Part shown: positions 9,538 through 59,964 of the stretch, piece after piece | How the letters are laid out: each line of letters opens with the position of its first letter | How positions within the stretch are numbered: position 1 is the stretch's first letter | DNA from: Paragordius varius | Lineage: Eukaryota; Animalia; Nematomorpha | Direction: 5' to 3' | Assembly: GCA_964247055.1 (NCBI GenBank) | Contig: OZ176057.1 | Location: 4,712,001 to 4,776,000, forward strand | DNA length: 64,000 nucleotides | The notes under the pieces: generated by a model | The model's input: the letters and a program-made list of their open reading frames with translations, nothing else | What the model was told of the DNA's origin: nothing | The model's database searches: none | Made by a program: the position numbers and the translations under genes

Positions 9538-12262
9538 CTATAATGCTTTAACTTTATCATGCCGTTGAAACACATCTCGGCCTTGCAAAACCTTTTTATT
9601 ATCATTTTGGGTGTTGTTATTATTGGCTGGAGGGAAATAGTTTAATATATTACTTGCTTCGTATTCGGATTGCACAATAATTTTTTCTACTATCCAATCC
9701 AAAAATGCACTAATTCTGGTGTAAATCCCAGGCGAAGTTCCACAAGCATGGCCCCATGCAGTCACTCCCAGTAATGTATATCGATCGGCAACTTCTTTAT
9801 GTGCAACGTTTGATTTCGTTTTGGAACGGCCGTATTTGGCTGATTTCGGTTGCTTTTGTTGTTTTAGTAGTCTACGCAAAAAAACACCGGTTTGGTTATC
9901 ATTTCGACTTGTACATGCGAGTGGTCCTCCACTATCCCCCTAAAAATAAAGGGAGCAAAATGGTTGGAATTTATTTTTGAACTGTAAAAAGTAGATTTTT
10001 TATATACTTTTGATTTATCAATTAAAATAATATTACTCCCATTAATATGTCGCTTGGTATATAAAATTATTTTTCAATCAATATTAATCGCTTATGATAA
10101 ACCTTAATTAGAGATTTATTTTTTTTTAAATATGCATCAAGAATCATATAAATAAAAGACGTAATATTTTAGTTTACGGTATTCTGTTTTCCAACAGATT
10201 AAAAAAATCATTATGTTAAACCAGGGTTTTCAAACTATCCAAATTCGGAAAGATTTATTAGGAAAACTTATTTATTTTTTACCTCAATATCGTAAAATAT
10301 AAAATGTGAAATTTCTTGGGTTCTGCAAATGTGTGGATACCGTTGGCCTATAAAAACGGTTTTATTATCGTTTAAGGTTACCTTATAGGTCTGATACGAA
10401 AAAAAGGGTATATTATCTTAACATTTTATATGCTGTTGTCGAATATAATTGCAGATATTATTAAAAAATATTAACCGAGTCCTAGTTGAGAATACTATTT
10501 AAAAATTTTGGCGTATACTAAAATTATTTTAGTCATAAATTATGTGCGGCAATATAAAACGTTATATAACACACAATTCTTATTAATGGTTTCTTTAACT
10601 AAAAATAGGCTTGACAAATTACAAAGGGCCATGTGAATGAGGTAGTTAGCTCAAAATATACTATAAAAAATAAATCCATATGAGCTAAAAAAGCCTCAAT
10701 TTAAAATTTTTCATCTCAACTTTAGTAATATTGGTCACTACAATCATTATATATATGTATATATCATTAAATCCCTGGAAAGCTCATCATTCACATAGCT
10801 ATCCAGGATTTAATTATATATTTTAATTTATTTAAAGCATTAGCGGTGCTTTGAATTTTAAAGATGTTGTTTGATCCCTTGGCATAGGAAACAAAAAAGC
10901 CCGCCTACGTTTAAAAATAGTCATTTTGCTCAGGATCGGCCTTAAAAGCTTCCCCTTTACTCATTAATAATGTAACCCAATTATATTTAATAATCAAAAC
11001 ATTATACACTACAAGTATCTCGTTTTAAATATTGATAGCCGGCACATATTTGATCACTTCGTATAAAGCTGTAATGTTTCTTACATAATCCCTCTGGCAC
11101 CAATGGTAAACATACTTGCATAAGTTCCTTTGCATCTAAAATTTCAGTACAACACATTATATTGTTGGTCAATGTTAGTATAAGACAGTAGCGTATGGGA
11201 TGATATTTAATGTCGCAAAATAGGTTATTTATCCTTATACTCTTCTACTGTAATGCCAATTGGCCTAAAATAGCATGAGGGGAGACCAACGTTACTGTGT
11301 ATACGGTGTATAATTATGTGAGTTATTCATTCGTTTCATAATTTTTATAAATGTGAATTTGATTGTTAAAAATATGTTTTTTTTATCCAAATTAAGAGTC
11401 AAATATACTTTCGAATTCGGGAACGATACCCCATCCTGTAGCATAACATTGGGGATCTGTAATGGGTTTATCTGAGGATTTTGGTATGCAAATAGGTCGT
11501 ATCTATTGTCCAAAATAAAATTAGCCATAACACTATATATATATAGTGTGCGAAATAGGTTTTTTTAACAATTGTTTTTTTCATGAGGGAGTTAAAGACC
11601 AATCAATTCATTTGCGTAAAAATTTTTATTTTGTTGAGGACCAAGTATTTGAAAAATTAAGAAAAAATCGAAATCGGGCAAAAAGGTAAAATTAATGATA
11701 ATTCGCAAAATAATGATAAAAGTTGAGTTGTATGGTTGATTAATTTTAGAAGTTTCTATATATAACTAGCTTAGAATCATACAAATAGGCTTTCTCTAAA
11801 ATCTCAGTTCAAAAGATGGCTTTTTTTTAACACACTTAAAAGTTAAAATTAAATTATGAAATTATGTTAAAACAATTAAATATTTACTTGCAAATCATTA
11901 TTAAAATTTCAACATCCATATTTTACTCTGTAAAAAAACTTCTACAAAATAAAACTAAAAATATTATTTTTTATTTTATTTTTATCATGTGGTTTATTGT
12001 AAAAAATGTATACTGTTTTTCTTTGGAATCTATGAGTGGGAGTTATAAAGTATATAATTTATACAAAATAGGATATAAAAGTTATAAAAATCAACCAACA
12101 ATCTGTATAAATTCCTTAACAGGTTTGTTTTAACACAAATTAATATTTTTACTGGAATATGTATGGATTTTTGGTTTTACAGCAAACGAATAAGATGGTC
12201 ATAAAAGCTGGTCATAAGCTAACTCATAAAAAAATTTTTTGTTTAAAATTTGTAGACAGTGT

Positions 12263-12317
<55 letters not shown>

Positions 12318-14598
12318 ATTTTTCAATCATTTTTTAAAACGCAACATTATTTCGAGTAAACCAATTTTTTAAAGATTAAAAAAAATTTTTTTTTATTTTA
12401 AGACAATTATTAGGTTTTTAAGTTAATATAATATAGTTTTAACAGTTGAATTATTATTGTTTTATCATCTGATGATATGTATGATTTTCAAACATTTTAA
12501 TTTTGCCCATAAATTGCATTTATTCATATTATTTTTTTTTCTTTTACAAACAACTTTAGTTTCATCTAATTCTATACATTGCGCTTCGTGAGTCTTTAGA
12601 AGTTTTTTTCCTTCACTCAAAAATCCTACAGTTGGCATACACCTTTTTGTATGTAATTATATTATTTTTTAATTTAACTATCTTTATAATCAAAATCAAT
12701 ATTTTCATAGTAAAAAAAAGTTTATTTGTTTCGAATTTTCTTTTTATAAAATATAAAATTAATGTGTAAATAAATATTACGATCAATAACCCACAAAAAA
12801 ATATTTTTTAATATAGTCAAATTTTGATCGAAAATAATAAAGATATACTATATTAAAGAGATAGTATTTAATTAATAATTTAGGTTGAATCAAGAAAATA
12901 GGCTTAAAATAGGTAGATGAATTTTATTGATTCATTAATAAAAGTTCAAATTTAAAATAGTGAACCAACTTGGAGTGTTCAGGGACCCACTTTGAATTGT
13001 CAAGAACAATCTTGAAGCGCAAATTCAATATTATATATAGATTAAGGGAAACTGTTGAAAAAAAATAATATAAATAAATAATGCAATTTATGGGCAAGAT
13101 TAAAATGTTTTAATTTACCATTAAATAGTGCTGATAAAACAACATAACTCTACAATAAATTTAAATTACATAACTTAATAATATTAATAATAAAATGGTT
13201 TTTAATTTTTTTAAAAAATGTGCTTTAAAAAATATTGCGTCTGGTTGACAAAATGTTGCTTTAGAATGAAAAGTTGTTTTTGCCTGAAAAGTGTTGCGTT
13301 TGGTTGAAAAAAATTTTAATTAAAAATGTTGTCTTTGTTTGAAAAATTGCGTTTGTTTGAAAAAATGTTGCCTTTGGATAAAATTGTGTCTTTGCTTGAA
13401 AAAAGGTTTGATTAAAAAATGTTGCGTTAGGAAAAATGTGCGTTAAAAAAATGTTGCGTTTGCTAGAAAAAAATTGTTTTGCTTGAAAAAATATTGTATT
13501 TGGTTGAAATGTTTTTGCATGAAAAATTGTATATATACAATATGCATTTTAGTGGGTGCTTATTTCACACTATAGTAGGGCAATTCGCAACACAGGAGTG
13601 TGTGGAAACAACAAAATTCCCTTTTCCATACACTCTTGTGTTGCGTTAAATAATCAACCATTAATGCATACAGTACTTTGTTACAAATAGGTTCGAATTT
13701 TGTATATGATACATACATGCTTGTTAAATTTAACTTTGCCATCCAATACAACTAGTCCTATATCATAGTATGATGAATGTTTAAATTTTTTGTGCATCAC
13801 ATGACTACCATACACAGTCTGAAGATATGGTTGGACAACTTTACCATATGTAGCATTTATACCTCTGTAATGAAGGCCCAATACATAAGTTAATTGATAG
13901 GGTGAATGTCCCCTATATAATATTTTAATAAATAAAAAAGTAAAAAATAAACCTTAAAATTGATAACAAAATTGAAGAGAGGTTATTTATGAAAACATAA
14001 ATAATATCATTAAATTGCTATATAATTTCTATTAAGTTGTTAGTGCAAATATTTTATAAAATTATAACTATTGAAATTGAGAATACGAATGATTTTATTT
14101 AAATGTTTTTAATTTTAATATTTTATCCAAGAATTTTACTTAAATGCATATGTTACATACTCTAAACAATGAGCAGCAGTAAGTATCAAGCGATCAGATA
14201 TTAGAACACCTCCGCAAATATAAAAGTCTGAAACATAAATGGCTACTTGCCAGGGCCAGGAATGGGGGTTAGCGGCATTTCCACCTATAATTTTGGCATA
14301 TGCATTACAGGGACTATTGTACTTTGGTAACACTGATATACCACAATCAGCCCCGTTTATTCCAGACATGTAGGCTTGCTTAATATAATTCTTAACCCTC
14401 AAATAATTTTTGTGAAGCAAGCTCACTTTAGCGTTTGCGGCTTTTTGTTTTCTAGCATGATCATGTATTACAGAGCCCGTAGTTAGTGGGGTGGAGCTTC
14501 CCATTCTGTTGAATGTTGACTCAGCTATATCATTGGTATCTGATGAGTGAATAAACTTGGGTATGTCAATAAACGCAGCCAGGTAAAATAAAATCAAT
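9538..14598 (-). CDS. Trypsin-like serine protease (S1A), copy A; first coding exon not identified
   Basis: Exons 14598-14161, 13912-13717, 11502-11409, 11135-11008, 9939-9538 join in frame with GT-AG. Motifs: IIGG activation site, TAAHC, DIGLVVL, IRPICIP, CYATGWG, ICAG, RDTCS|GDSGGP (Asp189 present). Confidence 0.93.
12310..13535. mobile_element. TIR element with ~20-bp subrepeats (aaaaatgttgcgtttggttg) in protease intron; paralog at ~38550-39595
   Basis: Minisatellite at 13215-13515 and 39310-39590, with an inverted counterpart (aacgcaacatt) at ~12340 and ~38570-38690. Confidence 0.55.
13538..13673. mobile_element. Small hairpin MITE (CAGTATGCATTTT TIR family), also at 39973-40124 and 63571-63828
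   Basis: Long internal inverted repeats (gcttatttcacactatagtag / ctactatagtgtgaaataagc in the 39973 copy) with TA flanks; three copies in the window. Confidence 0.7.
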
Positions 14599-14875
14599 CT
14601 GTAAAAATAAAATAAAAATGATGCTTAAATTTAACTCTTAAAGATATAATAAATTGATTATTCTTAAGTAAAATAAGGATATTACAAACCAAAACGACTG
14701 CCTAACGTTGCCCTCGTTTATATTGAATTGTATTAAAGATAGGGACCGAATCCAAGCTGAAAATGCAGTCAAAATTAAAGCCTTATTAAGGTTTTTAGTG
14801 AAGATGGTATATTACTTAAAAAAAGTATAAATTATAAAAACAAACCAATAATTCAGACAAAGATTGGACCGAACA

Positions 14876-14881
14876 TTTATA
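14876..14881 (-). promoter_or_regulatory. Candidate TATA box of the protease, conserved in copy B at ~41334-41339
   Basis: The block cattcaaca.cacacTATAAAt...gtccaat..tgtctgaat is conserved in both paralogs within diverged AT-rich flanks. No transcript evidence. Confidence 0.3.
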
Positions 14882-16266
14882 GTGTGCTGTTGAATGATTA
14901 ACATTTATTTGAATCTGAAAAAAAGGATGCAGGGATACGGAGAGGTGAAGTTTTTTTTTAATCAAAGGATTGGAATTAATAGAGGAAAGGATGTAAGCAT
15001 ATGTGGAAAACAGGCTAGATTTCTAATAGGTCTATGAAACACATGAAACAAATTTTAGAAAAAAATGTAGTTAAGTACATTGTACTAATATGGTACAGTT
15101 GATTAAAGTTAGAGGTAAACTACTTTAAGTAACTATGAAATAAAATTAATAAATTTCGTTGTTTTTGGAGCAGCATTAGGCATTCTTTGAATTAGGGGTA
15201 TTCCACATGCGACATTCCCATCTCTTGTGTGCGGCCCGTATTCAATAATTTGTTAAATATGTTCACTTTTAATAATTGATATTTTTAAATTTTACTAATC
15301 GAAATATATTATTGGCAAAAACTAGAAAAAATTGTTATATTGTGTATCAGTCTTTCTCAAAAATATTACCAATGAATGCCCATACATATTTAAAATGCAG
15401 TTAGCAAGGCCATTTTTTGTGTTGTGCCACCTTTGCTAATTTAAATAAGTAGGCCGTAGAGCTGAAAATGAAAATTGTTCATGTTCATTATGTGATTCTT
15501 TTATTAGTGTTGTCATTTTTCTTTTTTAAAATTTTTTAAATTTTAACTTATGAAGATTACGTATCTGATCACATAATAAAAAATTTCATTTTTTTAAAAT
15601 CTCTACTTGATGAACAAAATGCTATTATATTTTCCCTTAACATATGTTAAATGTAAAAAACAAAGTGATAAATCTCACACAAGGCAACAGACATGCATAT
15701 TTAATTCCCTTTTTGGCCATTTAATGGCCTAAAATAGCTCTCATTACGGATAAAATATGTGCTGTATTTGAACATTAAAATACCTGCAGTAGGAATTCAT
15801 TGTTTCAGTTGAGTAGGATTAGATGGATGATTTATAGGATAATAATTATATGAATCATAAAATTTAGTTAAATTATTATACCCTAAATAACATAAATATG
15901 ATCGACAACAATCGTCAATTTCTAATTAAAGTATTTTAAAAATATTTAAAATTAACTATCAAACTTATTTTAACCCAAATACTTATATATTTTAGCAATA
16001 TAAAAGAAGATAATCCTTTTATCAGGCCGGTCGAAGAGTACATACTCTTTTAATTCAAACGTTAAAAATAATTTATAAAATATTAATTATTTATAATATA
16101 ATTTTTCTAAAAATTGGCCCTATAAATATTATTTATCTATTTTTAATCCTATCTAAAAACAGGGATGTCCAACAGAAATGGCTTCGCCGGCCGCAATGCA
16201 AAATACATGCGCATTAACAAATATATTATTAATTTCAGACATAGGTAAAATTGTAAGTACTATTTA

Positions 16267-17908
16267 GAGTCATGTAGACTTTATTTTATTAAAGATTTAC
16301 TTTTTTTCGTTAATTGGGTATTAATATTTGGTAAAGAATATAAAAACAAGAGCTATATGGTATACCATATCATATTCTTTAAAAAATTAAAAGAAATGTG
16401 GGGGAAGGGTGTCAGAAATCTTTGCCAAAAAATGAAAATCTTAAATATTGTTTAAAGGGGAATGGTAATATTTTTGTTAATTTTTTGCAAAATTTTATAT
16501 ATTAATTGTTTTAAAATTTTATTTAACACTTAGATTCGAATTGGGGTATCTAAATATACCCCAGACTAAATTTGAGTTAGGATTTTAAAAAACTACTTAA
16601 GGAAACGGTCCGAATTTAATTCTATGTTTCCTTCCAATAAAAATTATATAAATATGCCAAAATATCTAAATAAAATTTTGTTTTGAAAAAAAAGTTCCAT
16701 GTCAAACAACTTCGACGCCATTTTTCTATATATTTGCAAAATGTCGTCTTCATTTAGTGTTAAGGAAATAAAAGATAATTTTTTATTTAAATCACATCTA
16801 ACCTTGATAGAAATAGAAGATTTATTTTCTTATTCTTTTTCAAATATTCCACACATGTCACGTTCACTAAATTTTTACCTTTTGGTTTTAGCTTAAATAT
16901 GAATGTGTTGTATCCAAGTGTTAAACAAAACAAATGGTAAAAAAAATATTTATTATAATTTTTTTAATAGGATATCACAATAATTAAAACAAACCTATAA
17001 CGGACAAATAATGAATTGTGTGTGTATATAAGGGAAAACATAGGAAATGAATATGGATTATATAGCGTTTGTAAAAAAATATTATCGAACTGAATTTATA
17101 TAAGGTTTTTTTGGATATTTTGCATTCTGTGGGTAGTTTATTGAGAATCTCATCGACAGTCAATTCACAATCACTATCGAGGATTGTTTTGACCTGCCCG
17201 ACTAGACCTTCATTGCATTTCGTTTTCTTACCCTTTTTCAATGGCTCTTTCTCTATTCCCGGAGTCATGCTTCGTCTCATAGCATTTATGGAACTTATAG
17301 ACATATCTAAATCATCTACAAAATGACGAGACGATAATTCGTGATTTCTGGGATTCCCGAAAATTTTATAGGCCTTAGACTTTTTTTCATCTGACCAAAA
17401 ATGATATTCTAAAATTAACAAAAACGGTACTTTTCCTTTTTTTCATTCCCGATCTCATTAACACCTAAATGAAAAAAAACCATCGTTGCCAGTCACACTA
17501 TATTGTGTGGGTCTTATATTTTTGTCAACATAATCTGAATCCAACATTATAAAGGAAAAAATACCCGCAATACCAGGGTTACATCCTAACGAAATTGAAT
17601 CAAATTGATTATTTAATATAGCATCTATCGTGAAAATCCTTTTAAAATCGTTTCCATAAAAAAAAATTATATTTGAGATAAAAATTACGATTTTTCTAAC
17701 CCTTTTATACAATAATTTTAAGTTAAGGTTGGTAGTTAGTGTATTTTCATTTTTTACCAAAGATTTCCGACGCCCTTCCCCCACACTTCTTTTACCTTTT
17801 TAAAATATATGATATGGTAATACCATATAGCTCTTGTTTTTATATTCTTTAACAAATATTAACACCCATTTAACCAAAAAATTTTTTGATAAAAAGTCTA
17901 CATGACTG
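16267..17908 (-). mobile_element. Tc1/IS630-like TIR element copy 1 (~170-bp TIRs, non-autonomous)
   Basis: (G/C)AGTCATGTAG...CTACATGACTG ends with TA flanks. ORF 16984-17421 encodes a bipartite HTH (VDDLDMSISSINAMRR; LTVDEILNKLPTECKISKKTLYK). No DDE domain seen. Confidence 0.8.
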
Positions 17909-18503
17909 TAGTTTTCCTATCACATATTTAAAATGAAAGTAAACTATTTTTTTTAATTTTTGGAGAAAAGTTGCATTATCAAAATATTATAATAACTATG
18001 ACGATTTTATGGGGGTATGTACTATTTGTGGATAAAATACTTACAGCCAAAAATTTGGCCAAAAAATTAATAGAACCGGAACCAAAATTATAAGTAAAGA
18101 ACTGATCTGACGGTTCCGGTTCCAATCCCTGCTTTTAAGCACATATTGTCTTTCTGTTTTGAACACTTATACATACAATTCCTAATTAACTCTTTGTATT
18201 TAATTATCAAATTTATAATTTGTTTAATTTTAACACAAAGAATGAAAAAACTTTCTTAAAAAACGATGATTTTCTAGTGAAGATTATTTGTGATTTAGAT
18301 ATATGCATCTATGGGCGTGATCATAGCCTCAAATTATCGAAATCGTCTTAAATCAAAATATTTGATTTAAATTCAAAATTTAAAGCAACACACACTTGTG
18401 TCATATTTATAATTTAAATAAAAACATTATTAGTACCACCATTTTCGGCCATACGAGTCTTGTTTTTTTTATCATATTTATATCTCCATTAGATTACGTT
18501 GGA

Positions 18504-18549
<46 letters not shown>

Positions 18550-18584
18550 ACATTAAAAGGTATAGAATTTATTATCAATATATT

Positions 18585-20326
18585 CTATTGTTCTTTACAT
18601 TGAGATAGATCAACATATATGCGGTGTGACATGTGTTCAGTCGAAGCTGATTTGCGATCTTTATATTGCGGATAAATGATAACTTCATACTCAGAATTTG
18701 GATCGAGGTTTGAAAAACGATATGTTCTGTCTTTTAGCTGTAATAATTTATATGCACTTGTGAAATAGATAAATGGGAACAAATTATATGGCACCACGGT
18801 AAAAACATAAGGAAAAGAGATTTATTAAACTACTATATAACTTACACCGAGTGTTGCCGTTTGAGCTCTTTCTCCTTCCACATTAGTTCGGCTTAAGGCA
18901 ATGCGTAAATTTTCGATCCCATAAGCTTTAGCTATGTGATCGGGAACGAGGTTTTCAATATAAACAACGAGATCTTTTGTCCTACCTTCATTGGAGATGG
19001 TGGCGCTTGCCTGCTTAATTGTAGCAAAAGATTTGGAAATATCTATCGTTCATGATATACAGTAAAAAATTAGAATGGTAAAAAATTACAGGTTTAAAAT
19101 AATTCATCAAATCATTGATTTTTACCATTCTGTTCAAGTTTATATTCATCTCCATGGGCGGTGACTAAAAACGAAAAAAAAATATAGATTTAATATCAAA
19201 AATCTTTAGCATATATGACAGAATGCCCTAAAAATATGTAAATATGCTATATTATTTAGCCAAATACGTACGTCATCATGTACAATAGGAGAAAAATATA
19301 TTACCCTTGAAGCGCAAATAATCTGCAAAAGAATTACGACTAGTATCACCTTGTTCTGCCAGTACCCACAACATGTATTCTACATTTGTAAGCAAATTTT
19401 TCAATTCAAACGTTGTGTCCTAAACATATATATAGTTAGTATTGACGAGCATATAATTATTTTTATTTCTATTTCTATTTTTCCTTTTTTCATGAGAGGG
19501 AATTGGTGCAAAAAATATTAACTAGCCTTTACCATATTTTCGTCGTTCTCTCTTGCGGGACCGTTGACTTCATACAAATGAGTTGCATTGAAATACGGCC
19601 AGAGTTTATAGGGATACCTCATTGGAGTATTTTTGATCCTTCGGTTGGGTTCATCGAAAGAAGCCATCACAGTATAATAAGTGTAAGGAACTGTGCGAAA
19701 TCCAGACATACAGAGCCTCAGATTACGTACACCCATATTTGATGCATCAGTAATCTTGCATCCTATATATATATAAATTTATGATAGGAGTTAAATTAAT
19801 TTTATGTTTTTTAAAAAATTTCACATCTATATTTAATTAATACAACACAGTTTATTTTATGTTGTTACATCACACAAGCTATTCAAAACGAAGAGCAACT
19901 CCTAAGTGATTAACTGATATTTATGTAGATTTCATATTCAAAATAAGGTCCTGACTTTTAGCTAAAGTATTTTAAAGTTAAGTCCTTCTTATATATTTAC
20001 TAGTTAATTAATATTTGGCGCCCTCATAATTATTAAAAAACGATTTAATTGTAATTATTTCGGGTTTTACAAATATATCAGTTAAATATTATCAGAAAAA
20101 AACTAAAATAAATTGAAAACCATATTGATTTTCATTTCTAGGCCAAATTTCATGGCTAATTTTCTTAAAATTCATGTTATCACTCTAATCATATTGAAAT
20201 TATATAATTTTATTAGAAAATAAAAATTAAATAAGTATTACCGTATTCGTTGTAATATCCCTGCATACAATCCGATATAGGGATAATTACAGCTAGGATA
20301 GCGAAAATAAACCTTATTGCAATCAT
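18585..20326 (-). CDS. Secreted protein, ~259 aa: signal peptide plus two divergent fibronectin type III-like domains
   Basis: Exons 20326-20242, 19762-19533, 19419-19305, 19042-18846, 18737-18585 with intron phases 1-0-1-0 and no stops. N-terminus MIAIRFIFAILAVIIPISDC. FN3 E/F-strand motifs TFELKNLLTNVEYMLWVLA and TYRFSNLDPNSEYEVIIYP. Confidence 0.85.
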
Positions 20327-21074
20327 ATTTAGAATCGAATTGCGTGTAATTTGGCCAAAAAATAAATTATAATTTTTGATATAAATGAACTCATACATAT
20401 ATATGTCTTAACCAGTCCACTCAAATATTTGTTAAAAATGTAACCTTAATTAATTTTAACCTAAAAGAGACTGTTTAACGCAATTTTAGCGGTCCTAATA
20501 TCATAGATTTAAAAGGGTTAGTGTTAAGCTAGCTGGCGAGGAGCGAATTCGATCGACGACGGAAGTGTAAATAAATTATATTATTTAAATAAGACAACAA
20601 TCTAGTTTATACCAGTTAGTGTGTCAATATTTAGATATAACAAAATAAAGAAGTGTTAAAAATATCTTTATTATAGGCGCACATTAAATATTCGATAGCT
20701 AAGAACACCAGTGTTACGGATATTAAAATAAGGCATTCGATTAAAATACGCGAGAAAAAACGTATAAAAGTTTTTCTGCTATGAACCACGATTAAATTAC
20801 ATTATCAAACATAATGTTGCACATATAAATAAAGGCCCAGAAATATTATTATTATTATCTATCATAAAAATTGACAAAAATTATATATAATACTGTTTTA
20901 AATTTTTGAGGTAAATGGTGTAATCAAATAATATATATAATTAATTAATTATAATTACAGTTTAGAGTCTCTTTTTTCCTTTTTTATTAAAGGGTAAGGA
21001 CTTAAATTTATATCCGGACATGTGAAGGCTTTAACACTCGCCTGCCCAGGGCTGACAGTGATGATGGAAAAAAA

Positions 21075-21147
21075 TGCGTAGTTTCGGGGTTCAAACTCTG
21101 GCACGCAGAGTTAGAGTCCGGCGCCCTACCTACTATACCATCGTGCC
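21075..21147 (-). ncRNA. tRNA-derived sequence (pseudo-tRNA or SINE head)
   Basis: 73 nt with A-box-like TGGTATAGTAGG and B-box-like AGTTTGAACCC, followed by T7. The acceptor stem does not pair, so it is not a functional tRNA. Confidence 0.45.
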
Positions 21148-21151
21148 TTCT

Positions 21152-21182
<31 letters not shown>

Positions 21183-21299
21183 GTGAATATAATTATAAAG
21201 TATGTAATTGTGTTATTTTTCGTATATTTTTGAATGTAATTATATTTGTTAAATTAGACGTATGTGGACATAAATCCTTACCGATTTTTCGTTAGCAGA

Positions 21300-22190
21300 C
21301 ATATATTTTTGAAGGGCAATAATTGATTATTTTTTTAAAATATTGTTTATCGGATTCGACACATTTCACCTATCTTCAATCACCATTTTTCATCGTATAT
21401 TTTATTGCGGTGTTGCTGCACTAGTGCATAAAACTGGGGAACGTGGGCTATAATAAAACTTTTGGTTTTGGTCATTAAGCGTGATATGAGATAAATATCA
21501 TCACTTTTCGGCCATTGTAAGATATTGGAAAATACCAAAATTTGCGCTCGTTAGCATAAATTTTTGGTAAAAGCTATTCTCAAATTTATAGTATCACTAG
21601 TTCATACTAGGTTTATATTGGAATGAGCCAAAATCTAGCGTCATATTTTTATCATTCAGCAATAATGTCAAACTTTCTGCTTGAAAAATAACATTTGCGA
21701 AATGCCCTTTTCTATTCCTTCCATCTGTAGTATGAATTGTAATGGGTGAGGTGGCTTTATTTTGTCAATCCAAAGCGGAAGAAATTGTGGCTTTAACATT
21801 TAATCGATTCGGCAATAATAATATAACCGGAATATTGTGCATTATAAGCTTTATGAAACCGTTATACACAACGTTATCTCCTCAAATGAACAATTTAAAT
21901 TATGCAATAGTAATCAAAAAGGACTGGAATGGGCCAGGCAGGCAAGGCAAATAAATTTTATTGCATAACAACAATGCTCCATCCATATGACACAGCACTC
22001 GAAAAAATATGTTTTAAAATGGCTATATGGGAACTAGCCGTATTCTCCTGACATGACGCCATCTGAATGGCCTCACATCAATGGGTTGTTACACGTTAGA
22101 GCAGCACTTTACTTTTAGAGGCATCGGAGAATGAACTGACAAATGGTTTGCCACACAAAAAACAATCAGTATTTAAGGCAGCATGTTATT
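21300..22190 (+). mobile_element. Decayed mariner-family transposase remnant
   Basis: Degenerate motifs KICAR* (WVP motif, ~21540), LHNNNAPS (~21961, DNA motif) and PYSPDMTPSE (~22048, YSPDLAPSD motif). Boundaries approximate. Confidence 0.7.
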
Positions 22191-22691
22191 CATCTAATAA
22201 TTTAAGGGGGGTGAGGCAAAATCTGTTAAAGCGATAGAATATTTTGAATAAGTTAAATGATTGATTTATCTTATTAGGTATTTACCAAATAACCGGTATA
22301 GACTTATGACTACACTTGGTGAAATAATAGAACTTTTTTTGGCTACCCGCCTTTTGTCGCAGATTTTTTTATTTAAATATTTTTTTGTTTTTTCTATAAA
22401 AAGTCAACCTTTAGCAGTGTTAATTAAAAATCAATTAAAATTAACTGTAATTTACAAAATTATAAATTTTAATTATACCATACACTTTGATATTATTTTT
22501 CAAAATTATGTGGAGTCAGAACGAGTATTTACGACATGTTACTCTGGTTTTCTTTTATATAGAAATAGTTTGAGGATTTTTTTTGATTTTCAAGGCCCTT
22601 TGTAGTTAATATGGTTGATCTTAAGAACGTTAAATATTGGAGAAAAATTAAATACGAATTGGGACCAATTAAAAAAATATTCACATCTTGT

Positions 22692-22729
<38 letters not shown>

Positions 22730-22859
22730 CAAAAATATCTAATGACCGTTGTGATTAAGGTTTTATGTGATTCAAGACAATTATATTGAATTAAAATTTA
22801 AATAGTTGCTTTTATTAACGTTAGTAATTATTAGATAATTTATAAGGGACTTTCTCACA

Positions 22860-23249
22860 GACATAAGCACTAAAGAAATTAGAAGAAAGACGCTTTGAAC
22901 AAACAGAAATAAGGATTGATGTGCGGTGTAACAGGAAAGATAAAGTGAGGTGTCTATACATTAGAGGAAATACAACCGTTAACTTAAATGATGTGATTTT
23001 ATATCGTCTTAGGTGGTGTCTGAGAAAAATATGATAACTACATTGGTAAAAAGATGTATGAATAAATTGTGTGAAAGGTAAGAGGGGAAGAGGCGCCCCA
23101 AACGAGATGGATAGATAAGGTTAGGAAATATATGGCAAAACCGAACCTATCTCGCAAAAACGCCATTGACAGGGTTCTTTTGCTAAATAGTTTACAGATA
23201 TAACCGCTCGAAAGAGTGGTATCATAATTTGTAATTATTATTATTATTA
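22860..23249 (+). mobile_element. 3' fragment of RTE-type LINE with (TTA)n tail
   Basis: Degenerate VKGKRGRG.P..RWID C-terminal motif at ~23070-23120; ends in attattattatta. Confidence 0.6.
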
Positions 23250-24763
23250 CAGTCATGTAGACTTTATTTTATCAAAAATTTACTTTTTTTGGTTAAATGG
23301 GTGTTAATATTTGGTAAAGTATAAAAACAAGAGCTACATATCATATTCCTTAAAAAAGTAAAAGAGTGTGGGGGAAGGGCGTCAGAAATCTTTGGTAAAA
23401 AATGAAATCTTAAAATATTGTTGATGGGGAATGGTAATATTTTTGTAAATTTTCAGCAATTTTTATTAATTTTTTTGCTAAAATTTTTATTTAACATCTA
23501 GATTCAAATTGTATCTAAATATACCCCAGACTAAATTTGAGTTAGGATTTTTAAAAAACTAGTGAAAGAAGTGTTCCCACTTTAAATTTATGCTTCTTTC
23601 CTAATGAAAATTATATAAATATGCCAAAATATCTAAATAAAATTTTGTTTTGAAAAAAAGTTTTATGTCAAACTACTATACAAAATATTTGCAAAATGTC
23701 GTCATTTAGTGTTAAGGGTAAATTTAAAGCTAATTTTTTTAATCACATCTAACAATAGAAATAGAAAAAGCGATTTATTTTGTATTTTTTAATTTTACCA
23801 TTCCACACATATCACGTTGACTAAATTTTTACCTTTTGGTTTTAGCTAAAAAATGAATGTTATCTAACTGTCAAACAAAACATATTAACCACTTAATTAT
23901 ATATTTTCATATATAGGTAAAAAAATATTTATTATAGTTATTTTAATAGGATATCACAATAAATAAAACAAATATATAATGGACAAAATATAAGGATGTA
24001 ATCAATTGTGTATATATATAAGGGAAAACATAAGAAATGAATATGGATTATATAGCGTTTATTGTCTAAATCATCTACAAAATGACGAGACGATAATTCC
24101 TGATTTCTGGGATTCCGAAAATTTTGTAGGCCTTACACTTTTTTCATCTGACCATATATGATATATTAAAATTAACAAAAACGGTACTTTTCTTTTTTCC
24201 TCTACCGTTTAATGAAGCCGTCATATTTTCATTCCCGATCTCATTAACACCCAAAGTCAAAATGAAAAAAAACATCGTTGCCGGGCAACTATTTAGTGTG
24301 GTTATATTTTCGTCAATATTATCTGAATCTAACATTATAAAGGAAAAAAAACATCAAGGACATCAGGACAAGTCTCTACTATCAATTCATTCCGTCGATC
24401 TTATAAACACCTAGTCTAAACGAAAAAAAACATCGTTGTCAGTCACAATAGTTTGTGTTTGTCTTATACCAGCGTCAAAATATTCTGAATCTAACATTAT
24501 AAAGAAAAAGAATACCCGCAATACCAAGGTTACATCCTAACGAAATTGAATCATTTATTTAATATAGCATCTATCGTGAATATCCCTTTTAAAATCGTTC
24601 CCATATCAAAACAAAAAAATTATAATTGATATAGAAATTACGATTTTCCTAACCCTTTTATACAAAGTGAAGGGTTAGTAGTTAAGTTATAATCTTTACC
24701 AAATATTAAAACGCAACTAACGAAAAAAAGTAAATTTTTGATAAAATAAGATCTACATGACTG
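23250..24763 (-). mobile_element. Tc1/IS630-like TIR element copy 2 (same orientation as copy 1)
   Basis: CAGTCATGTAG left TIR; right TIR shortened to ~70 bp and ending CTACATGACTG; internally collinear with 16267-17908, with a deletion in the HTH ORF and an internal duplication (~24200-24520). Confidence 0.85.
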
Positions 24764-24904
24764 TATTTTAATATTTTTTCCTTGTTTATTGCCGTATTTC
24801 GGGAGATTTATTCAAAAAAATTGTTAAAAAAATCAATTTTACTTAGATTTCGTAAAAATTTGTATTGGAAATTTCTCGCAGGCTTAGAAATATCATAAAT
24901 AGAC

Positions 24905-25205
24905 CAGTGATACTCAAACCGCGGCCCACAGCCGATGCGGCCCTAAGAGCGCCTTATTGCTCTTTGACCATATTGATACTTAAATTATTTTTTTATTGAT
25001 GAATTTGTGTAAAATACACTTAAACGAATTTTCACTCATATTATTTTCTTTATATTTAATTTTGGTAATTGTTATTTTTTACCCAATTCGAAATGGAGAA
25101 AAATTTCCCTACATTAAAATGATTTTAAAATTTCGGCGCACGTTGTTTCTGTATTCTATTTTCTTTTCTATTTTGAAATCATTCTTTTTTGTATTTAAGC
25201 AAGCC
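24905..25205 (+). mobile_element. hAT-type element left end (truncated copy of 29984-30277)
   Basis: Starts CAGTGATACTCAAACCGCGGCCC; ~300 bp collinear with the left end of the hAT at 29984. Confidence 0.65.
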
Positions 25206-25799: not shown

Positions 25800-26950
25800 T
25801 AATAATCAATTACTACATATTTTGGACCTTTTAATAAATACAGGTAAAAATTGCGGTTTTTAACAAATTTAGTTTTTTTTTGTTTTTTAGGTTTTGCATT
25901 GTTAATTGTAATTATTTACTAGATATTTTGGACATTATTATAACAGGTGAAAATTGCGGTTTTTAACAAATTTAGTAAACAATTAGATTTTTTTGTTTTT
26001 TAGGTTTTGCAATGTTATTGTAATTAATTACTACATATTTTGGACATTATTATAAATACAGGTAAAAATTGCGGTTTTTAACAAATATAAAAATTTAATT
26101 TGTTTTGTTTATTCATTGTTAATTGTAATTAATTACTACATATTTTGGACATTAAAATAAATACAGGTAAAAATTGCGGTTTTTAACAAATTTAGTAAAA
26201 ATTTAGTTTTTTTTGTTTTTTTAGGTTTTGCATTGTTATTGTAATTAATTACTACATATTTTGGACATATTATAAATACAGGTAAAAATTGCGGTTTTTA
26301 ACAAATATAAAAATTTAATTTGTTTTGTTTATTCATTGTTAATTGTAATTAATTACTACATATTTTGGACATTTAAATAAATACAGGTAAAAATTGCGGT
26401 TTTTAACAAATTTAGTAAAAATTTAGTTTTTTTTGTTTTTTTAGGTTTTGCATTGTTATTGTAATTAATTACTATATTTTGGACATATTATAAATACAGG
26501 TAAAAATTGCGGTTATTAAATAAAAATTTAGTTTTTTTTGTTTTTTTAGGTTTTGCATTGTTAATTGTAATTATTTACTACATATTTTGGACATTTTTAT
26601 AACAGGTAAAAATTGCGGTTTTTAACAAATTTAGTAAAAAAAAATTTTTTTGTTTTATAGGATTTTCATTGTTAATTGTAATTAATTACTACATATTTTG
26701 AAATAAATACAGGTAATAATTGCGGGTTTTAACCAAATGTAACATTTTTTGTATTTTGTATCATTGTTATTTAATTAATTACTAATTATTTCGAACATTT
26801 AAAAAACTGGTGTAAATTGCGGTTTTTAAAAAATTAGTAAAATTTTAAATTTTTTGTTCAACCTTGCCAATTTATTTATCACTATAAATTTGTGATACTT
26901 TGATATATACAGGTAAAAATTACTATGATTTGCGGTTTTTAAAAAATTTT
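25800..26950 (+). repeat. ~105/115-bp satellite, about 10 units, dimeric higher-order structure
   Basis: caggtaaaaattgcggttttt recurs at 25841, 25944, 26059, 26164, 26279, 26384, 26497, 26603, 26710. Confidence 0.9.
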
Positions 26951-29983: not shown

Positions 29984-31810
29984 CAGTTATACTCAAACCG
30001 AAGCCCTAAGAGTGCTTTTAAAACCCCATATCACCATATTGTATTTAAATTATTTTTTTATTGATGAATTTTAAAAATTCGCATTAAATTTTTTCTTACT
30101 TTAATATTAATATTTTTTCCTTAGATTTAATTTTGGTAATTTTTACTTTTACCCATGATATGTAGATAAATTTTCAAACATTAAAAGAATTTTAAGATTT
30201 TGGCACACGTTGTTTCTGTTTTTGATTCTATTTTTTTTTATTTTAAAATTTTTCGTCCTTTTTTTGTATTTAAGCAAAACTCAGCAAATGAGGTAAGAAA
30301 CGAAAAATATAAAAAGATTAAAGGTATACCAGAAAAAAATCTATTATGTCCATAGCTTTGTCCCAGGAAAAAGCTGTAACATTAGTTTCTGAAATTAAAT
30401 AGGAAAAAAGATGAAACTATTTACTTTCCAACCAAATGGTTCCTCTTTTTTATTTGATAAATTCCAAAATAAAGATCAAATCTTGAGGTGAATTAACTTC
30501 AACTTTCTGAAAATGTGCTCGACGCATTGAAGATATGTCAATTATATTTTTAAGAATACAACTCTCAAAAACTGATATTTAGTATGCTATTGATTTTAGC
30601 ACTGATACTAGTCCAACACCTAAATGTGCCCTCTTCGTGAGATTTAGCAACGACAACATAATTAAAGAAAAATATAAAAAAATTTTACCAACGAATAATA
30701 CCACGAAAGAAGGTTTCTCGAAATAATTAGCACTTTTTTCGATTATAATGGTATATCTATCAAAAAATTGGTTTCGATCTACACAGATGGTTGTCCCTCT
30801 ATGATTGGAATAACTAAAGGATTAATTCCTCTTTTGAAAAACAAATATTGCAAAATAATATATTCTTCCACTGCTTATTCATCAGCAAAACTTGGTTTCG
30901 CTAGTATAAGATGAAATCACCCAATTTATTAATTAAAACGGTTGTGAATATTATTCACATCCGTGGCAGAAAATTCAACCGCCGTTTATTCAAATTCTGA
31001 ATGATCACAGAGAGTCTGATAATATTATTTTGTACACCGCAGTGCTGGTTAAGCTTTAACAAAGCATTGAATATTTTGTTTTAAGATATAAAATTCTATT
31101 ATTTATAAAAAGATATCACAAAGTTTGAAAAGGAAATCGTGCTACCTTTGCGACATTACTAGTATTATTAATACAAGTCTTCTCAAGCGAAAATAATACA
31201 ATTTGACAATCAAATATTTGCTTTTGAAGAAAAATTAATAATATAACAAGATTTTATAGATAAAAACACTCCTATATTTTCCAGCACTTAAACGATTATG
31301 AAGAAAATATGGAATTTACCGCGGAGATTTATTTAATAATAGCAATCATTTAACATTTTTATTTAATGAGATAAAATTCAGATTCCAAGAATTAAAAATG
31401 TTTAATTATTTAAAACGTGAAAATCCATGGCATATGGATATATCCAATATTATCCAGCTTAAGCATTTTGGTTTTGATCAACGCTATCATTAAAGAATTC
31501 GTAGATTTTAAAAATGAATTCAATTTGGAGACTATCAAGGTGAATCGTAGAAAAAGATGTATTAGAAAATATAAAAATATTGCTCAAGTTATCCAATAAA
31601 AAATCTGCTCAAGTTATCCTATAAAAAATGTGCTCATCCTAACTTTCCAAGAATGCATACAATCGCTTAACTGATGATCATATGGACGACGTATTAAGAT
31701 TAGTCTATGAGGCAAAAACAAATTTGTCAAAAATTTTTGGTTTATACCAAAATAAATATTGTCAAATTTGAATTTTTTAAACTAAATGGTGCATAACGAG
31801 TATCTAGCTG
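29984..31810 (+). mobile_element. Decayed hAT transposon (Buster/SPIN/GTF2IRD2-like)
   Basis: Left end CAGTTATACTCAAAC; transposase remnants RRIEDMS (~30520), AIDFSTD..ALFVRF, VSIYTDGCPSMIG (~30780), and a frameshifted HC..HQQNL; degenerate right end at ~31800. Confidence 0.8.
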
Positions 31811-37558: not shown

Positions 37559-37598
<40 letters not shown>

Positions 37599-41065: not shown

Positions 41066-43129
41066 CTGTAAAAATAAAATAAAAATGCTTAATTTTAACA
41101 TTCAATAATATATTAATTGTCCTTGAGTTAAAAAAAGTATTATGTTTTAAACCAAAATTGGATGACTAACGTTGCCCTCGTTTAAATTGAATTGTATTAA
41201 AGTTAGGTTCCGTATTCAAGTAAGGATAATTAAGATCAAAACATTATCAGAGAGATGGTATATTAACTTGAGGAAAAGTGTACCAATAATTTTCGAAATA
41301 TTTTACAAATATTCAGACAAATTGGACGTAAGATTTATAGTGTGGTGTTGAATGATTGTTAAATTTATTTAAATCTAAGAATAAAAGTATACAGACACAG
41401 AAGTTTTAAATTAAATTGGATTATAGAGAGGATGTAAGCATAAGTGGCAAACAGGCAAGACTTTCAATAGGTCTAGGGTAGACATGAAGCAAATATAAAA
41501 ATGTAGGTACATTGTCCTAATATGGTGCCGTTGATTAAAGTTAGGGCTAAACTACATTAAGTAGGCATAAAATATTTCAAATTGATGGAACTTGTTGTTT
41601 TTAGAGCAGCATTAGGAATTATTTAACCCTCTAAACCGGGGATATCGACATGGGCACGCCTTGACCTTATGTTTGAACCGCGAATAATTCGGAATTCCAT
41701 TATTTGCGAAATATTATCACAAAAAAGGAAAATTGATATTTCATAAACAATTTTTCTAATCATTTTAATAGAATTGGCAAAAACTAGAAAAAATGTTATA
41801 TATTGTGTGTTCATTTTACAGTATGTTTGCAATCTAAAATTACCAAGGAATGTCCATACATATTTGTGCTAGGCCACCCTGTTACTCTAAAAATAGGCCG
41901 TTTTTGCTCTAAATAAAATTGTTTCTGTACATTACGATACTTATACATTTTAGGAATGTCATTTATGTTCTTAATAATTTTTTTTTAATATTTTTACAAA
42001 AATATCATTACCATGATGAGCTATTGGGCCATTAAAAAGGTAATTTATTTTTTATATCTGTTCCCTATATAAGAAAAGCTAATTATTTTAGTTACTTACA
42101 TATATAATTGATGAACAAAACATTCTTTAAAAATTTGTTTAAAAATATATCTAACAAAACGAAAAAGCTCACAAATGACAACAGACATGTATATTTAATT
42201 CCCATTTTAGCTGTTTAATGGCCTAAAATTCTTTTTTTGATAAAATATGTGCTTATATCGTACTTAAACATTAATTTTAAATTACCTGAAATAGGAATTC
42301 ATCGTTGCCGTGATTAGATATTAAATAATTATATATGATTCGGAAAAATATATAATTAAATTATTAAGCCCTAAAAAATATAATTATGATCCTCAAAACA
42401 TTAGAATGGTCATTTTCTAATTAAATTATTTTATAAAAAATACTTTAAACTTAAATATCAAAATTATTTCAACTTCTAAAATTATAAAATATTTCAAACT
42501 TAATTATCAAAATTATTTCAACTTGTAATATTATCTATTTTGGCAACATAAAAAATGGTACTTTACTCAAGCCGGTTGAAGAGTCCATATTAAAAGCTAG
42601 AAATAATTTATAAAATATTAATTAATTATAATATCATTGTCTAAAAATCGACTCTATAAATATTATTTCTATTATATATCCTATTTAAAAACAGGGGTGT
42701 CCAACACAAATGATTTTGAGGACCGCAATCGCAAATATGCACCTTAACAAATATTATATTAAATTTTAGACATAGGTAAAATTGTAAATACTGTTTATTT
42801 AAATATTTTTTTGGCCTATATTGCCCTAATTTCGGAGATTTATTCAGAAATGTTGCTCAAAAATCAATTTATTTAGATTTCGTAAAAATTTGATTGGAAA
42901 TTACTCGCAGGCTTAAAAAATATCCAAATTATATATTATAAATTAGAAAACACTTATTTGAATCGAAAATAAATGTGCAATAGATTATATATGTTTTTAC
43001 GGTATAACCCAATGAAGATCATTTATTTTGCCTATTAAAAGTAACGTCAATAACTGTAAAATAATAAATTTGTTGTATATGTTATTCGTTGGTATATAAT
43101 GATCTATCCTCATCATTCATTTGTATGGG

Positions 43130-57147: not shown

Positions 57148-59964
57148 ATTTAAAAAATAGTTAAAAGTTAAATTTTTTTGGTTTATGAAAAATTTATATC
57201 TAAGAACAAAACAAAAAAATATATAATTTTGTAATTACGGGAAAAATAAAAATTTATTTATAAAAACATTTATATCGCAAATACATTGATAAATAATTAT
57301 CCAAATACTATGTTTTGATTAATCAATTATTCTTCTTTTAATCACACAATGAAGTAAATTATATAAACTTTTTTGACTGTATTATATATTTATATATATA
57401 TATATATATATATATAATTTAAAAATTTCCAGTATAGTGTTTTTTTGTAAAAAAATTATTTATAATTATGAATGAAATCTGATGTATGAATTAATATGAT
57501 TTTTACACGCTGCCTTAAGACCTCAAAGGACAAATATTTTTAGTATATCGTTCTTTTTTTTCAATAAAAATTATATCAGCAAGAAATCAATTTAAAAAGA
57601 TAAATAAAATAAAATGTACAGTTATAATTGAAATTTTATACGGGGACAAAACGTAAAAATATATGAAAAAAAACATTTTTTTCAAAAGAGATAACCATAT
57701 TTTTAATAACGTAATTTTTTAAATATAACTCCTTGTTTTTTTAACCGTAAAGTTATCAAACAGAAATGTATATTGGTAAAACAATCAGTTTTATCATTAA
57801 CGATTTTAATGATTTAAATGAGAAAAATTCAGTTTTAAAACGTATGGGCGCGCTTTTATAAAAAAAATATTTGTGTTTAAATTTTTACGTTTTGTCCCCG
57901 TATAAAATCAATTTTTACTGTATTTGACTTTAAAAATTTAATAATTTTCATGTTTTTGATTTTGATATATTATAAATTTTTTATAGATGATACAAAAGAA
58001 GTTATATTAACTACTGAGAATATTTGTGGTAACAATAATGAAACATATTCATTGGCTAAATTTATGAATTTATTGCATCACGTGCTCTTGATCCTTACTG
58101 ATTGGCTGGAAAACCTTGATTGCTTGCCGGATGATTTGAATGTATACCAAAAATATAAAATATATATATTAATTTTTGCTAAAGCTCCATATATATTTGT
58201 AAAAAGTATAAAAATTTAAGTTATATATATAATTTTAAGTAAGTTTTTTTATATACTTATATTTGTATATGAATACGAATTCAAATTCACGAATAAATTT
58301 TGTTTTTGGGTTAATATAACTCCTCGTTAATATTAATTAAATATAACTTTATGACATAGTTTATTATGTATTATTATAAATTATGTTGATTTTAAACGAT
58401 ATTTTATTATTTTTCCAAAAATTTCAAAAAAATATAGGTAATTTTTTCGATTAACATAAACACATCATATATTTTAATATCAATTTTATAATTTGTAAGA
58501 TGAGTGAATTTAAGGCAGTAATCCTTTGTATTGAGCAATAAACTCCTTAAAGTATATGTTATGTTTTCCAATTTTCACATAAGATTTTAGTTTTATTCGA
58601 CATATAAAATATGTTAAATAAAATATTTGCATAAATTTACTGGTTATGCGTGGGTATTTTAGAGATCCCATATAATGAACTAAAAAATAATGAAAAAAAA
58701 CGTAAATTTTAAAATATTGTTACAATTCAAATTCACCCTAAAAATAAATTATGTGTTTTCGAACTAATATAACTCATTATTAATATAAAATATACCTTTA
58801 TGGCATAATTATTTATTTTTTTCAGTATTATTTTAATAAAACAAAATTTTATTTTTTAAAAATATATTAAAATATAGGTAATTTTTAATCTTAAAAAACA
58901 TGTTATTTATTTGAGGGTGAATTTGAATTGTTCGAGGGTAGATTTGAATTGTTTAAGGGTGAATTTGAACTGTAAATGGTATATATATATTACTAAAATA
59001 AAATTGGGGTAAAATTCAGTATAAATTGTTTGTCAATATAATTTAAAAAACATTAATTAAACATATAAACGATATTAAATTGCTAGCGTGATAGCCCTTA
59101 AATAAATGCTAAATAAACTTACAGTCATGTATTCTTTATTTTATCAAAAAAAAATTTTTCTGTTAAATGGATAAAAATATTTCGTAAAGAATGGAAAAAA
59201 CAAGAGCTCTATGGTGTTAAAAATACTATCATATTCATCAAAAAATATAAAAATTACCATAGAGCTCTTGTTTTTCCATTCTTTACCAAATATTTAACAG
59301 ACCCATTTAACGAAAAAAATAAATTTTTGCTAAAATAAAGGATACATGACTGTACTCTATTACTTAATATATATATATATATATATATCAGATAAATTTT
59401 TAATTTTAGATTGAAACGATGCCAAAAATACTACGGAAAGAAGGCTTGACACAATCAAATTCCCACAATGATAATATTTGCCACACCTATTCTCATACAG
59501 ATAATAAATTTGAAATAGTTAAACTTAAACATAAAAATACGAATTATACAAATGTGGTACAAATATCGGATAATATATTCAGTTTTCATATCCCACTACA
59601 TAGATATCTTGCCCATATTTTAATCACAGTATGTTTTAAACAAAATACCTCTAATTACCAAAGTTATGATAAAAATAATGTTAATAATATGTCGGAACCT
59701 AATCATATATTAACGTATCTAACGCGACATTGCCCACCTAAAACGCATATCAAAACTTATCTTAAAGCTTTATTTTTGCACCCTTTGACGATTCAGGTGA
59801 TGATATTTTATTGTTATTCTTAAATTATAAAAAAATTACACAAATTTCATTTAAATAGTTGATTACCATATCCGATCAAATTGATGCTTGAAAAATTCAA
59901 ATTCACCCTCGAACAATCCAAAATTTACCCTAAATTATGTTTTTTAAGATTTATTACCTATATA

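What the first reader, a model, noticed from the sequence alone, without database searches (positions are those of the whole stretch)
16267..24763. Apparent eukaryotic composite (compound) transposon: two Tc1-like elements bracketing an intact host gene, inserted at a TA that is empty in the paralog
Seen in sequence: two same-orientation CAGTCATGTAG-TIR elements (16267-17908 and 23250-24763) enclose 5.3 kb holding an intact secreted FN3 gene, a tRNA-like repeat, a mariner remnant and a LINE tail. The outer flanks read aagtactatt-TA-[8.5 kb]-TA-ttttaatattttttcc. The paralogous segment reads aaatactgtt-TA-tttaaatattttttt (42787-42812), and homology continues on both sides. So the whole block, not one element, occupies a single duplicated TA. 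Established: Tc1/mariner elements duplicate TA; bacterial composite transposons and alternative transposition use the outer ends of two elements. Inference: the block was captured elsewhere and moved as one unit, relocating a functional gene. It is probably immobile now, since the first base of the outer left TIR is G rather than C. Alternatives: recombinational integration of an element-plus-cargo circle into a resident element, or loss from copy B.
Basis: partly seen in the sequence, partly recalled or inferred. Interest (0 to 1): 0.88.

Follow-up and report, generated by a model that had tools for sequence, protein, structure and literature searches.

The report
Gene carried between two TA-transposons
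An 8.5-kb block made of two related cut-and-paste transposon copies and the 5.3 kb between them, including an intact orphan gene, sits in one TA site that is empty in an old duplicate of the region. It most likely jumped in as one unit, a mechanism already known from maize and rice but seldom documented in animals.

Summary
The structural observation holds. E1 (16267-17908) and E2 (23250-24763) are same-orientation, non-autonomous, TA-flanked elements with about 175-bp inverted ends that begin CAGTCATGTAGAC. The whole block 16267-24763 is missing at a single TA (42796-42797) in a paralogous segment.

That segment is the second copy of an old duplication (JC about 0.19) carrying a trypsin-like protease gene. 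Homology runs about 8.5 kb to the left of the site but only 131 bp to the right.

The cargo gene (18585-20326, minus strand) has 6 exons and 272 codons. It is intact, single-copy and shows signs of constraint. It has no detectable homologues, no RNA support, and only sub-threshold FN3 signal.

The element family is extremely abundant in the genome. A second sample about 2% diverged has the same left junction as far as its contig reaches (24 nt into E1) and also holds the cargo.

My best reading is macrotransposition from the two outer ends (about 0.5). Import of the cargo into a resident element by recombination or gap repair (about 0.25) cannot be excluded. No donor locus and no second copy was found, and only the left junction has read-level support.

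The mechanism is known: Ac/Ds and Tam3L macrotransposons, Pack-Mariner elements, bacterial composite transposons. This is a new member of a known kind, of moderate interest. The scan had not found this before on other DNA.

The parts
16160..16266 (+). Left half of the target sequence in copy A (a CAGGGATGTCCAAC-type repeat), ending in the TA at 16265-16266
   Evidence: Aligns to 42692-42797 in copy B. Word depth is about 7 times single-copy, so it is a moderately repeated family.
16267..17908 (-). E1: 1642-bp non-autonomous TA-flanked element. Inverted ends at 16267-16439 and 17743-17908. The first base is G instead of C.
   Evidence: TA on both sides. The two ends are 85-88% alike.
16984..17421 (-). 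145-aa ORF inside E1, a possible remnant of a transposase N-terminal HTH domain
   Evidence: All ten best named Atlas hits are IS630/Tc1-type HTH families, at score 0.93 but with only 163 shared features. No match in Pfam, PDB or the homologue search. The AF2 model is poor.
17909..23249 (.). 5341-bp cargo of ordinary genomic DNA, with TA at each inner junction (17909-10 and 23248-49)
   Evidence: No similarity to copy B or to the rest of the window apart from TE fragments. Its unique parts have single-copy depth.
18585..20326 (-). Intact 6-exon gene encoding 272 aa with a signal-peptide-like N-terminus and weak FN3-like signal; an orphan
   Evidence: Gene model. Sub-threshold fn3 hits on exons 3 and 6. 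No homologues. Differences from the second sample: 6 synonymous to 3 non-synonymous, and exons less variable than introns.
20980..21160 (-). Highly repeated SINE-like segment that looks tRNA-derived by eye
   Evidence: Word depth is about 500-1300 times single-copy. No tRNA or Rfam match.
21400..22230 (+). Decayed mariner-like transposase remnant
   Evidence: Motifs ILLHNNNAPS and PYSPDMTPSEWPH appear in shifted frames. No Pfam support.
22860..23249 (+). LINE-like 3' tail ending in (ATT)n, cut by the E2 insertion
   Evidence: Read from the sequence. No Pfam support. The (ATT)n run does not continue after E2.
23250..24763 (-). E2: 1514-bp element of the same family and orientation. It lacks the 235 bp at E1 17071-17305, has an internal ~158-bp duplication, and its right inverted end is shortened (24687-24763).
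24764..24894 (+). Right half of the target in copy A, starting with the TA at 24764-24765. Paralogy ends at 24894.
   Evidence: Aligns to 42796-42924 at 82.6% identity.
42692..42924 (+). Empty site in copy B, with a single TA at 42796-42797 and no footprint
59122..59352 (.). 231-bp miniature copy of the same family (two inverted ends only), flanked by TA

Best explanation
E1 and E2 are two non-autonomous members of a very abundant TA-targeting family of cut-and-paste elements with long inverted ends (Tc1/mariner-like). At some other locus they had inserted separately, in the same orientation, 5.3 kb apart. E2 went into the (ATT)n tail of an old LINE.

A transposase supplied in trans then paired the left end of E1 with the right end of E2. 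It cut out the whole 8.5-kb unit and inserted it into a TA about 1.7 kb upstream of serine-protease gene copy A, after the protease region had been duplicated. This is macrotransposition.

The unit carried a complete small secreted-protein gene, which has stayed intact and appears to be under purifying selection.

Shown: the anatomy, the empty paralogous site, the abundance of the family, the single-copy cargo, and the intact gene. Inferred: the joint excision and insertion, the separate origin of E1 and E2, and the timing.
For: The block's limits coincide to the base with one end of each of two complete same-family elements, and one TA is duplicated around it. Copy B has a single TA with no footprint.

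The DNA beside the inner ends is unrelated to the target. The LINE (ATT)n tail stops at E2 and does not resume after it, so E2 did not insert in place.

All six ends of the three family copies in the window abut TA. The family is present at roughly 10^2 to 10^4 times single-copy word depth. Closely spaced pairs and past transposase activity are therefore expected.

E1 and E2 differ less in the inverted end (15/162) than in the interior (91/555; Fisher p=0.024). This hints that part of their divergence arose while the ends were still under selection for mobility, that is, before the event.

The mechanism has precedent in eukaryotes, including TA-targeting Mariner elements in rice.
Against: No donor site, no second copy of the block with other flanks and no outgroup state could be examined.

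TA is only 2 bp, so it cannot prove a single insertion event.

Each outer end now carries one mismatch in the terminal 13 bp, while the inner ends are perfect.

By established knowledge, Tc1/mariner transposition becomes less efficient as element length grows.

Only the left outer junction has read-level support, and only 24 nt into E1, which is below the tool's 31-letter bridging rule. The other three junctions rest on the assembly alone.
Confidence: 0.5

Rival explanations
1. Import into a resident element. A single E element already occupied this TA. The cargo was then brought in by homology with an E-cargo-E locus elsewhere. The route could be integration of an excised E-plus-cargo circle by one crossover, or ectopic gap repair or template switching after a break in the resident element. 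E1 and E2 would then be chimeras of resident and donor elements.
For: The end state is identical: TA at the outer and inner junctions, and direct orientation, which this route requires. Thousands of family copies give many homologous partners. E1-E2 distance (about 0.15) is close to, and slightly below, the A-B distance (about 0.19). The two elements could therefore have been near-identical when the block formed.
Against: It needs a resident element at exactly this TA plus one or two rare homologous events that carry 5.3 kb of heterologous DNA. No sign of chimerism is visible in the four ends. No second copy of the cargo at 90% identity or more exists in the sample's contigs, although gap repair would leave the donor intact.
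Confidence: 0.25
2. Composite insertion by reversed-ends alternative transposition with re-replication, as described for maize Ac/fAc. The facing inner ends of a pair insert into an unreplicated site. The elements and their outer flanks are then re-replicated and joined, giving element-flankDNA-element at the new site while the donor stays in place.
For: It produces the same outline of two direct elements around host DNA with one target duplication (abstract of PMC4270019 and related papers listed).
Against: It is known only for hAT elements that transpose during replication. The cargo is single-copy, with no donor duplicate at 90% identity or more. No internal repair junction is evident in the cargo.
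Confidence: 0.07
3. The block predates the duplication and was lost from copy B. Either the whole unit was excised and the site precisely repaired, or the block was deleted.
For: E1-E2 distance and A-B distance are similar, so the order of events is not fixed.
Against: Copy B has a clean single TA with no footprint. By established knowledge, Tc1/mariner excision usually leaves a few bases behind. A random deletion ending exactly at both element tips is very improbable.
Confidence: 0.07
4. Assembly artefact: a false join inside E1 or E2 placed an unrelated 5.3 kb between two repeat copies.
For: The family is extremely repetitive. Short-read contigs break inside it, so three of the four junctions lack independent support.
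Against: E1 and E2 differ by about 15% plus many indels, so they would not be collapsed. Contigs from two samples run from the unique left flank into the E1 tip and stop at the same base, 16290. The cargo has the same depth as the flank.
Confidence: 0.05

Closest known systems
Maize macrotransposons (Ac/Ds pairs, and the Tam3L pair that moved Ccd1 to create White Cap)
   Same: Two nearby elements in direct orientation act through their outer ends. They carry the intervening genes to a new site, which receives one target duplication.
   Different: Those are hAT elements with 8-bp duplications in a plant. They have been observed genetically, and the donor is known. Here the elements are TA-targeting and Tc1/mariner-like in an animal, and the event is inferred from one old locus with no donor.
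Pack-TYPE elements, including rice Pack-Mariner (Gisby and Catoni 2022, PMC8903248)
   Same: The model is that neighbouring insertions with compatible ends are mobilised as one element together with the DNA between them. Rice Mariner clusters AB and BB contain two element copies spaced by extra DNA, with TA duplications.
   Different: Pack elements usually carry small gene fragments, often lose their inner ends, and amplify. Here both inner ends are kept, the cargo is 5.3 kb with a whole intact gene, and the block is single-copy.
Bacterial composite transposons (Tn5, Tn10; Tn630 in the IS630 family, PMC11544213)
   Same: Two copies of one insertion sequence bracket cargo and move by their outer ends. 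The IS630 family shares TA targeting with Tc1/mariner.
   Different: The bacterial insertion sequences encode their own transposase. E1 and E2 do not, and would have needed a transposase supplied in trans.
Engineered Sleeping Beauty 'sandwich' transposons (from my own knowledge)
   Same: Two complete Tc1-like elements flank a large cargo and are mobilised from the outer ends into a TA.
   Different: That construct is artificial and uses an inverted arrangement with disabled inner ends.

Membership tests
Tc1/mariner (IS630-Tc1-mariner) superfamily, non-autonomous derivative | TA target-site duplication | tested here: met
   All 6 ends of the 3 copies abut TA. The empty paralogous site has one TA.
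Tc1/mariner (IS630-Tc1-mariner) superfamily, non-autonomous derivative | Terminal inverted repeats | tested here: met
   About 175-bp inverted ends, 85-88% alike within E1, with the terminal motif CAGTCATGTAGAC.
Tc1/mariner (IS630-Tc1-mariner) superfamily, non-autonomous derivative | DDE/D transposase or a recognisable remnant of one | tested here: inconclusive
   No match in Pfam, PDB or the homologue search. The only signal is an Atlas feature resemblance of the 145-aa ORF to IS630/Tc1 HTH domains, below the 170-feature mark.
Composite transposon / macrotransposon | Two complete elements of one family at the two ends of the unit | tested here: met
   E1 and E2 align end to end in the same orientation.
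Composite transposon / macrotransposon | One target duplication around the whole unit, and a matching empty site | tested here: met
   The flanks at 16266 and 24764 join at 42796-97 in copy B.
Composite transposon / macrotransposon | Evidence that the unit moved: a donor site, or further copies with other flanks | tested here: not met
   The cargo is single-copy in the sample's contigs, with no variant at 90% identity or more. No copy lies elsewhere in the window. The rest of the genome could not be searched.
Composite transposon / macrotransposon | No solo element at the site in relatives (which would exclude import into a resident element) | not testable with these tools
   The only other sample (about 2% diverged) already carries the left junction and the cargo. 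The run labelled as another organism is identical at low depth.
Fibronectin type III domain protein | Pfam fn3 match above the gathering score | tested here: not met
   13.6 and 15.6 bits against a cut-off of 25, on exons 3 and 6 only. The Atlas does not recognise exon 2. The spliced protein was not scanned as a whole.

The most novel reading that the evidence does not exclude
A natural macrotransposon built from two Tc1/mariner-like miniature elements moved a complete orphan secreted-protein gene, which has been maintained by selection, to a new chromosomal site in an animal. Because this family has thousands of copies, pairs of them could be a general route for relocating whole genes in this genome.
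Probability: 0.45. Interest if true: 0.55.

Novelty: new member of a known kind. Interest (0 to 1): 0.4.

Why it matters
Whole-gene relocation by pairs of cut-and-paste elements is well documented in maize and inferred for plant Pack elements. Natural animal examples with TA-targeting elements and an intact, constrained cargo gene are rare.

If confirmed, this locus would show that abundant miniature Tc1/mariner-type elements can shuffle complete genes in animals. It would also give a concrete pair (E1, cargo, E2) to test with the family's transposase.

As it stands, this is a single old event without a donor, so its value is as a clean candidate rather than a demonstration.

Tried and rejected
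**Searches that returned nothing**
- FN3-like gene: the ORF search found no candidates. The search of 1.84 billion representatives gave one marginal repetitive hit. The Atlas did not recognise exon 2.
- E1 ORF: no homologues and no solved relatives. The AF2 model had pLDDT 46, so I did not run a fold search on it.
- Exact-protein look-ups for two ORFs, one spanning the cargo/E2 junction, were not on record.
- RNA: no RNA run of the species holds the gene's words.
- ARAGORN and Rfam on the block found nothing.
- Pfam found nothing on the mariner-like and LINE-like pieces.
- Earlier scan notes, searched by words and by sequence, held nothing on this family or on composite units.

**Tests that were uninformative**
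- The third copy of the host repeat at 44450 is too diverged to show the target site.
- The chimerism test on the four inverted ends shows no pattern.

**Readings I considered and dropped**
- In-place tandem duplication or sister-chromatid transposition. In those cases the cargo would begin with the right-flank sequence, and it does not.
- A read laying joint 17070->17306 with filler ATTG first looked like proof that E2's 235-bp deletion is a subfamily trait. The contig may be E2 itself, so I do not use it.
- The run labelled as another organism (X5) as an outgroup. Its contigs are identical to the window at low depth.
Full report
**What is there**

The window is AT-rich (26% G+C). E1 (16267-17908, 1642 bp) and E2 (23250-24763, 1514 bp) are two copies of one element family in the same orientation.

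Each has long inverted ends that begin CAGTCATGTAGAC. E1's ends span about 173 bp and are 85-88% alike. E2's right end is shortened to 77 bp.

A third, miniature copy (59122-59352) consists of the two ends only. All six ends abut TA. The terminal 13-mer occurs 8 times at up to 2 mismatches, against 0.28 expected by chance.

Neither element has a recognisable transposase. One 145-aa ORF in E1 resembles IS630/Tc1 HTH domains by language-model features only. It has no sequence homologues and gives a poor structure model.

I therefore call these non-autonomous, TA-targeting, Tc1/mariner-like elements. That placement rests on the target site and the ends.

**The empty site**

BLAST of the window on itself shows a ~9.2-kb segmental duplication. 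Copy A is 7806-16266 plus 24764-24894, and copy B is 33593-42924. Identity is 72-83% (JC about 0.18-0.23).

Each copy carries a trypsin-like serine-protease gene on the minus strand.

The alignment runs 15659-16266 to 42153-42797 and resumes at 24764-24894 to 42796-42924. The shared 2 bp are the TA. The 8497-bp block therefore interrupts copy A at one TA that is single and footprint-free in copy B.

After that the duplication ends and another repeat begins. The third CAGGGATGTCCAAC copy at 44450 is too diverged to inform on the target.

**The cargo (17909-23249)**

The cargo has no similarity to copy B or to the rest of the window. It holds a minus-strand gene of six GT-AG exons. The open reading frame is 272 codons with a hydrophobic N-terminus.

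FN3 signal is sub-threshold, and no homologue was found anywhere.

The cargo also holds:
- a highly repeated SINE-like segment, which is not a tRNA by ARAGORN or Rfam;
- a decayed mariner-like remnant seen only at motif level;
- a LINE-like tail whose (ATT)n run is cut by E2 and does not resume after it.

That last point argues that E2 did not insert in place.

**Reads**

I laid contigs of four runs on 15400-21399.

- In the best-matching sample, a 978-bp contig covers 15400-16290 without a difference.
- In a second sample of the same species (about 2% diverged), a contig covers 16065-16290.
- Both contigs stop 24 nt into E1, which is short of the tool's 31-letter bridging rule.
- The second sample also holds the cargo.
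- Unique cargo contigs have the same word depth as the left flank (169-192 against 161). No variant of 90% identity or more appears, so the cargo is single-copy.
- E1's left half reaches 10^5-10^6 depth, so the family has thousands of copies.
- The run labelled as another organism is identical at low depth. It is not an outgroup.
- The other three junctions were not tested.

**Is the gene functional?**

Among the differences from the second sample that the tool listed, nine are exonic: 6 synonymous and 3 non-synonymous (binomial p=0.01 against 75% non-synonymous). Exons vary less than introns (9/811 against 13/446, p=0.024). These lists are incomplete.

If the block is as old as half the E1-E2 distance, a neutral 819-nt frame would almost never stay open. 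In simulation it stayed open 0 times in 4000. At a quarter of that age it stayed open 6% of the time.

No RNA run holds the gene, so expression is unshown.

**Mechanism**

It cannot be chance that both limits of an 8.5-kb insertion fall on the tips of two same-family elements with a duplicated TA. The element ends were involved in the event.

The simplest route is macrotransposition: a transposase supplied in trans paired the left end of E1 with the right end of E2. In support, the inverted end differs less between E1 and E2 than the interior does (p=0.024). This suggests that part of their divergence predates the event. The family's abundance also makes close pairs common.

The main rival is import of the cargo into an element already resident at this TA, by circle integration or ectopic gap repair. 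It gives the same end state and requires the direct orientation that is observed. The four ends give no chimerism signal either way.

I also considered:
- re-replicative composite insertion;
- loss from copy B;
- misassembly (the last is weakened by the ~15% divergence and many indels between E1 and E2).

Tandem-duplication and sister-chromatid routes are excluded, because the cargo does not begin with the right-flank sequence.

**Comparison with what is known**

- Macrotransposons are established for maize Ac/Ds and for the Tam3L pair that moved Ccd1.
- Macrotransposition has been proposed for P-element relatives in a mosquito.
- Gisby and Catoni describe 'mobilisation of neighbouring insertions' for all TIR superfamilies. 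This includes rice Mariner clusters that hold two element copies spaced by extra DNA.
- In bacteria, the first IS630-family composite was reported only in 2024.

This locus works like those systems. For membership, the structural criteria are met, but evidence of movement as a unit is not.

**Verdict**

This is a new member of a known kind, of moderate interest.

Noticed in passing
window 7806-16266 and 33593-42797: An old segmental duplication (JC about 0.19) of a multi-exon trypsin-like serine-protease gene on the minus strand. ORFs with IIGGNAANPHSWPWQV...LTAAHC lie at 14136-14597 and 40561-40869, and C-terminal exons at 9538-9879 and 35511-35852.
   Followed up: partly
window 16200-17000 and 20800-21200: Word depth in short-read contigs is about 10^3-10^4 times single-copy over the left half of E1 and about 10^3 times over the SINE-like segment. 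The middle of E1 (17000-17600) is only about 90 times. Most family members are therefore deletion derivatives that keep the left part.
   Followed up: partly
window 25803-26858: Tandem array with a ~105-bp unit (also scored at 220 and 325 bp), about 8-10 copies, 77-86% matches, just right of the duplicated segment.
   Followed up: no
window 60529-61119: Tandem array with a 178-bp unit, 3.4 copies, 76% matches.
   Followed up: no
window 39600-39970 and about 20 sites between 48900 and 63500: A ~250-bp dispersed repeat in both orientations, 70-94% alike. It is very dense in the last 15 kb of the window. One copy pair forms an inverted repeat at 39592-39970.
   Followed up: no
window 4702-5675 and 5986-7017: A ~1-kb inverted repeat pair, 75% alike, separated by about 300 bp.
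   Followed up: no
window 24905-25202 and 29984-30277: Another repeat that begins CAGTGATACTCAAACCGCGGCCC, similar in style to the CAGGGATGTCCAAC repeat. In copy A it starts about 10 bp after the point where paralogy with copy B ends.
   Followed up: partly
run X5 (labelled as a different organism), laid on window 15400-21399: Its contigs match the window with no differences at depth 2-6. That run therefore contains a small amount of DNA of the same strain. Possible causes are carry-over, a mixed sample or a labelling issue.
   Followed up: no
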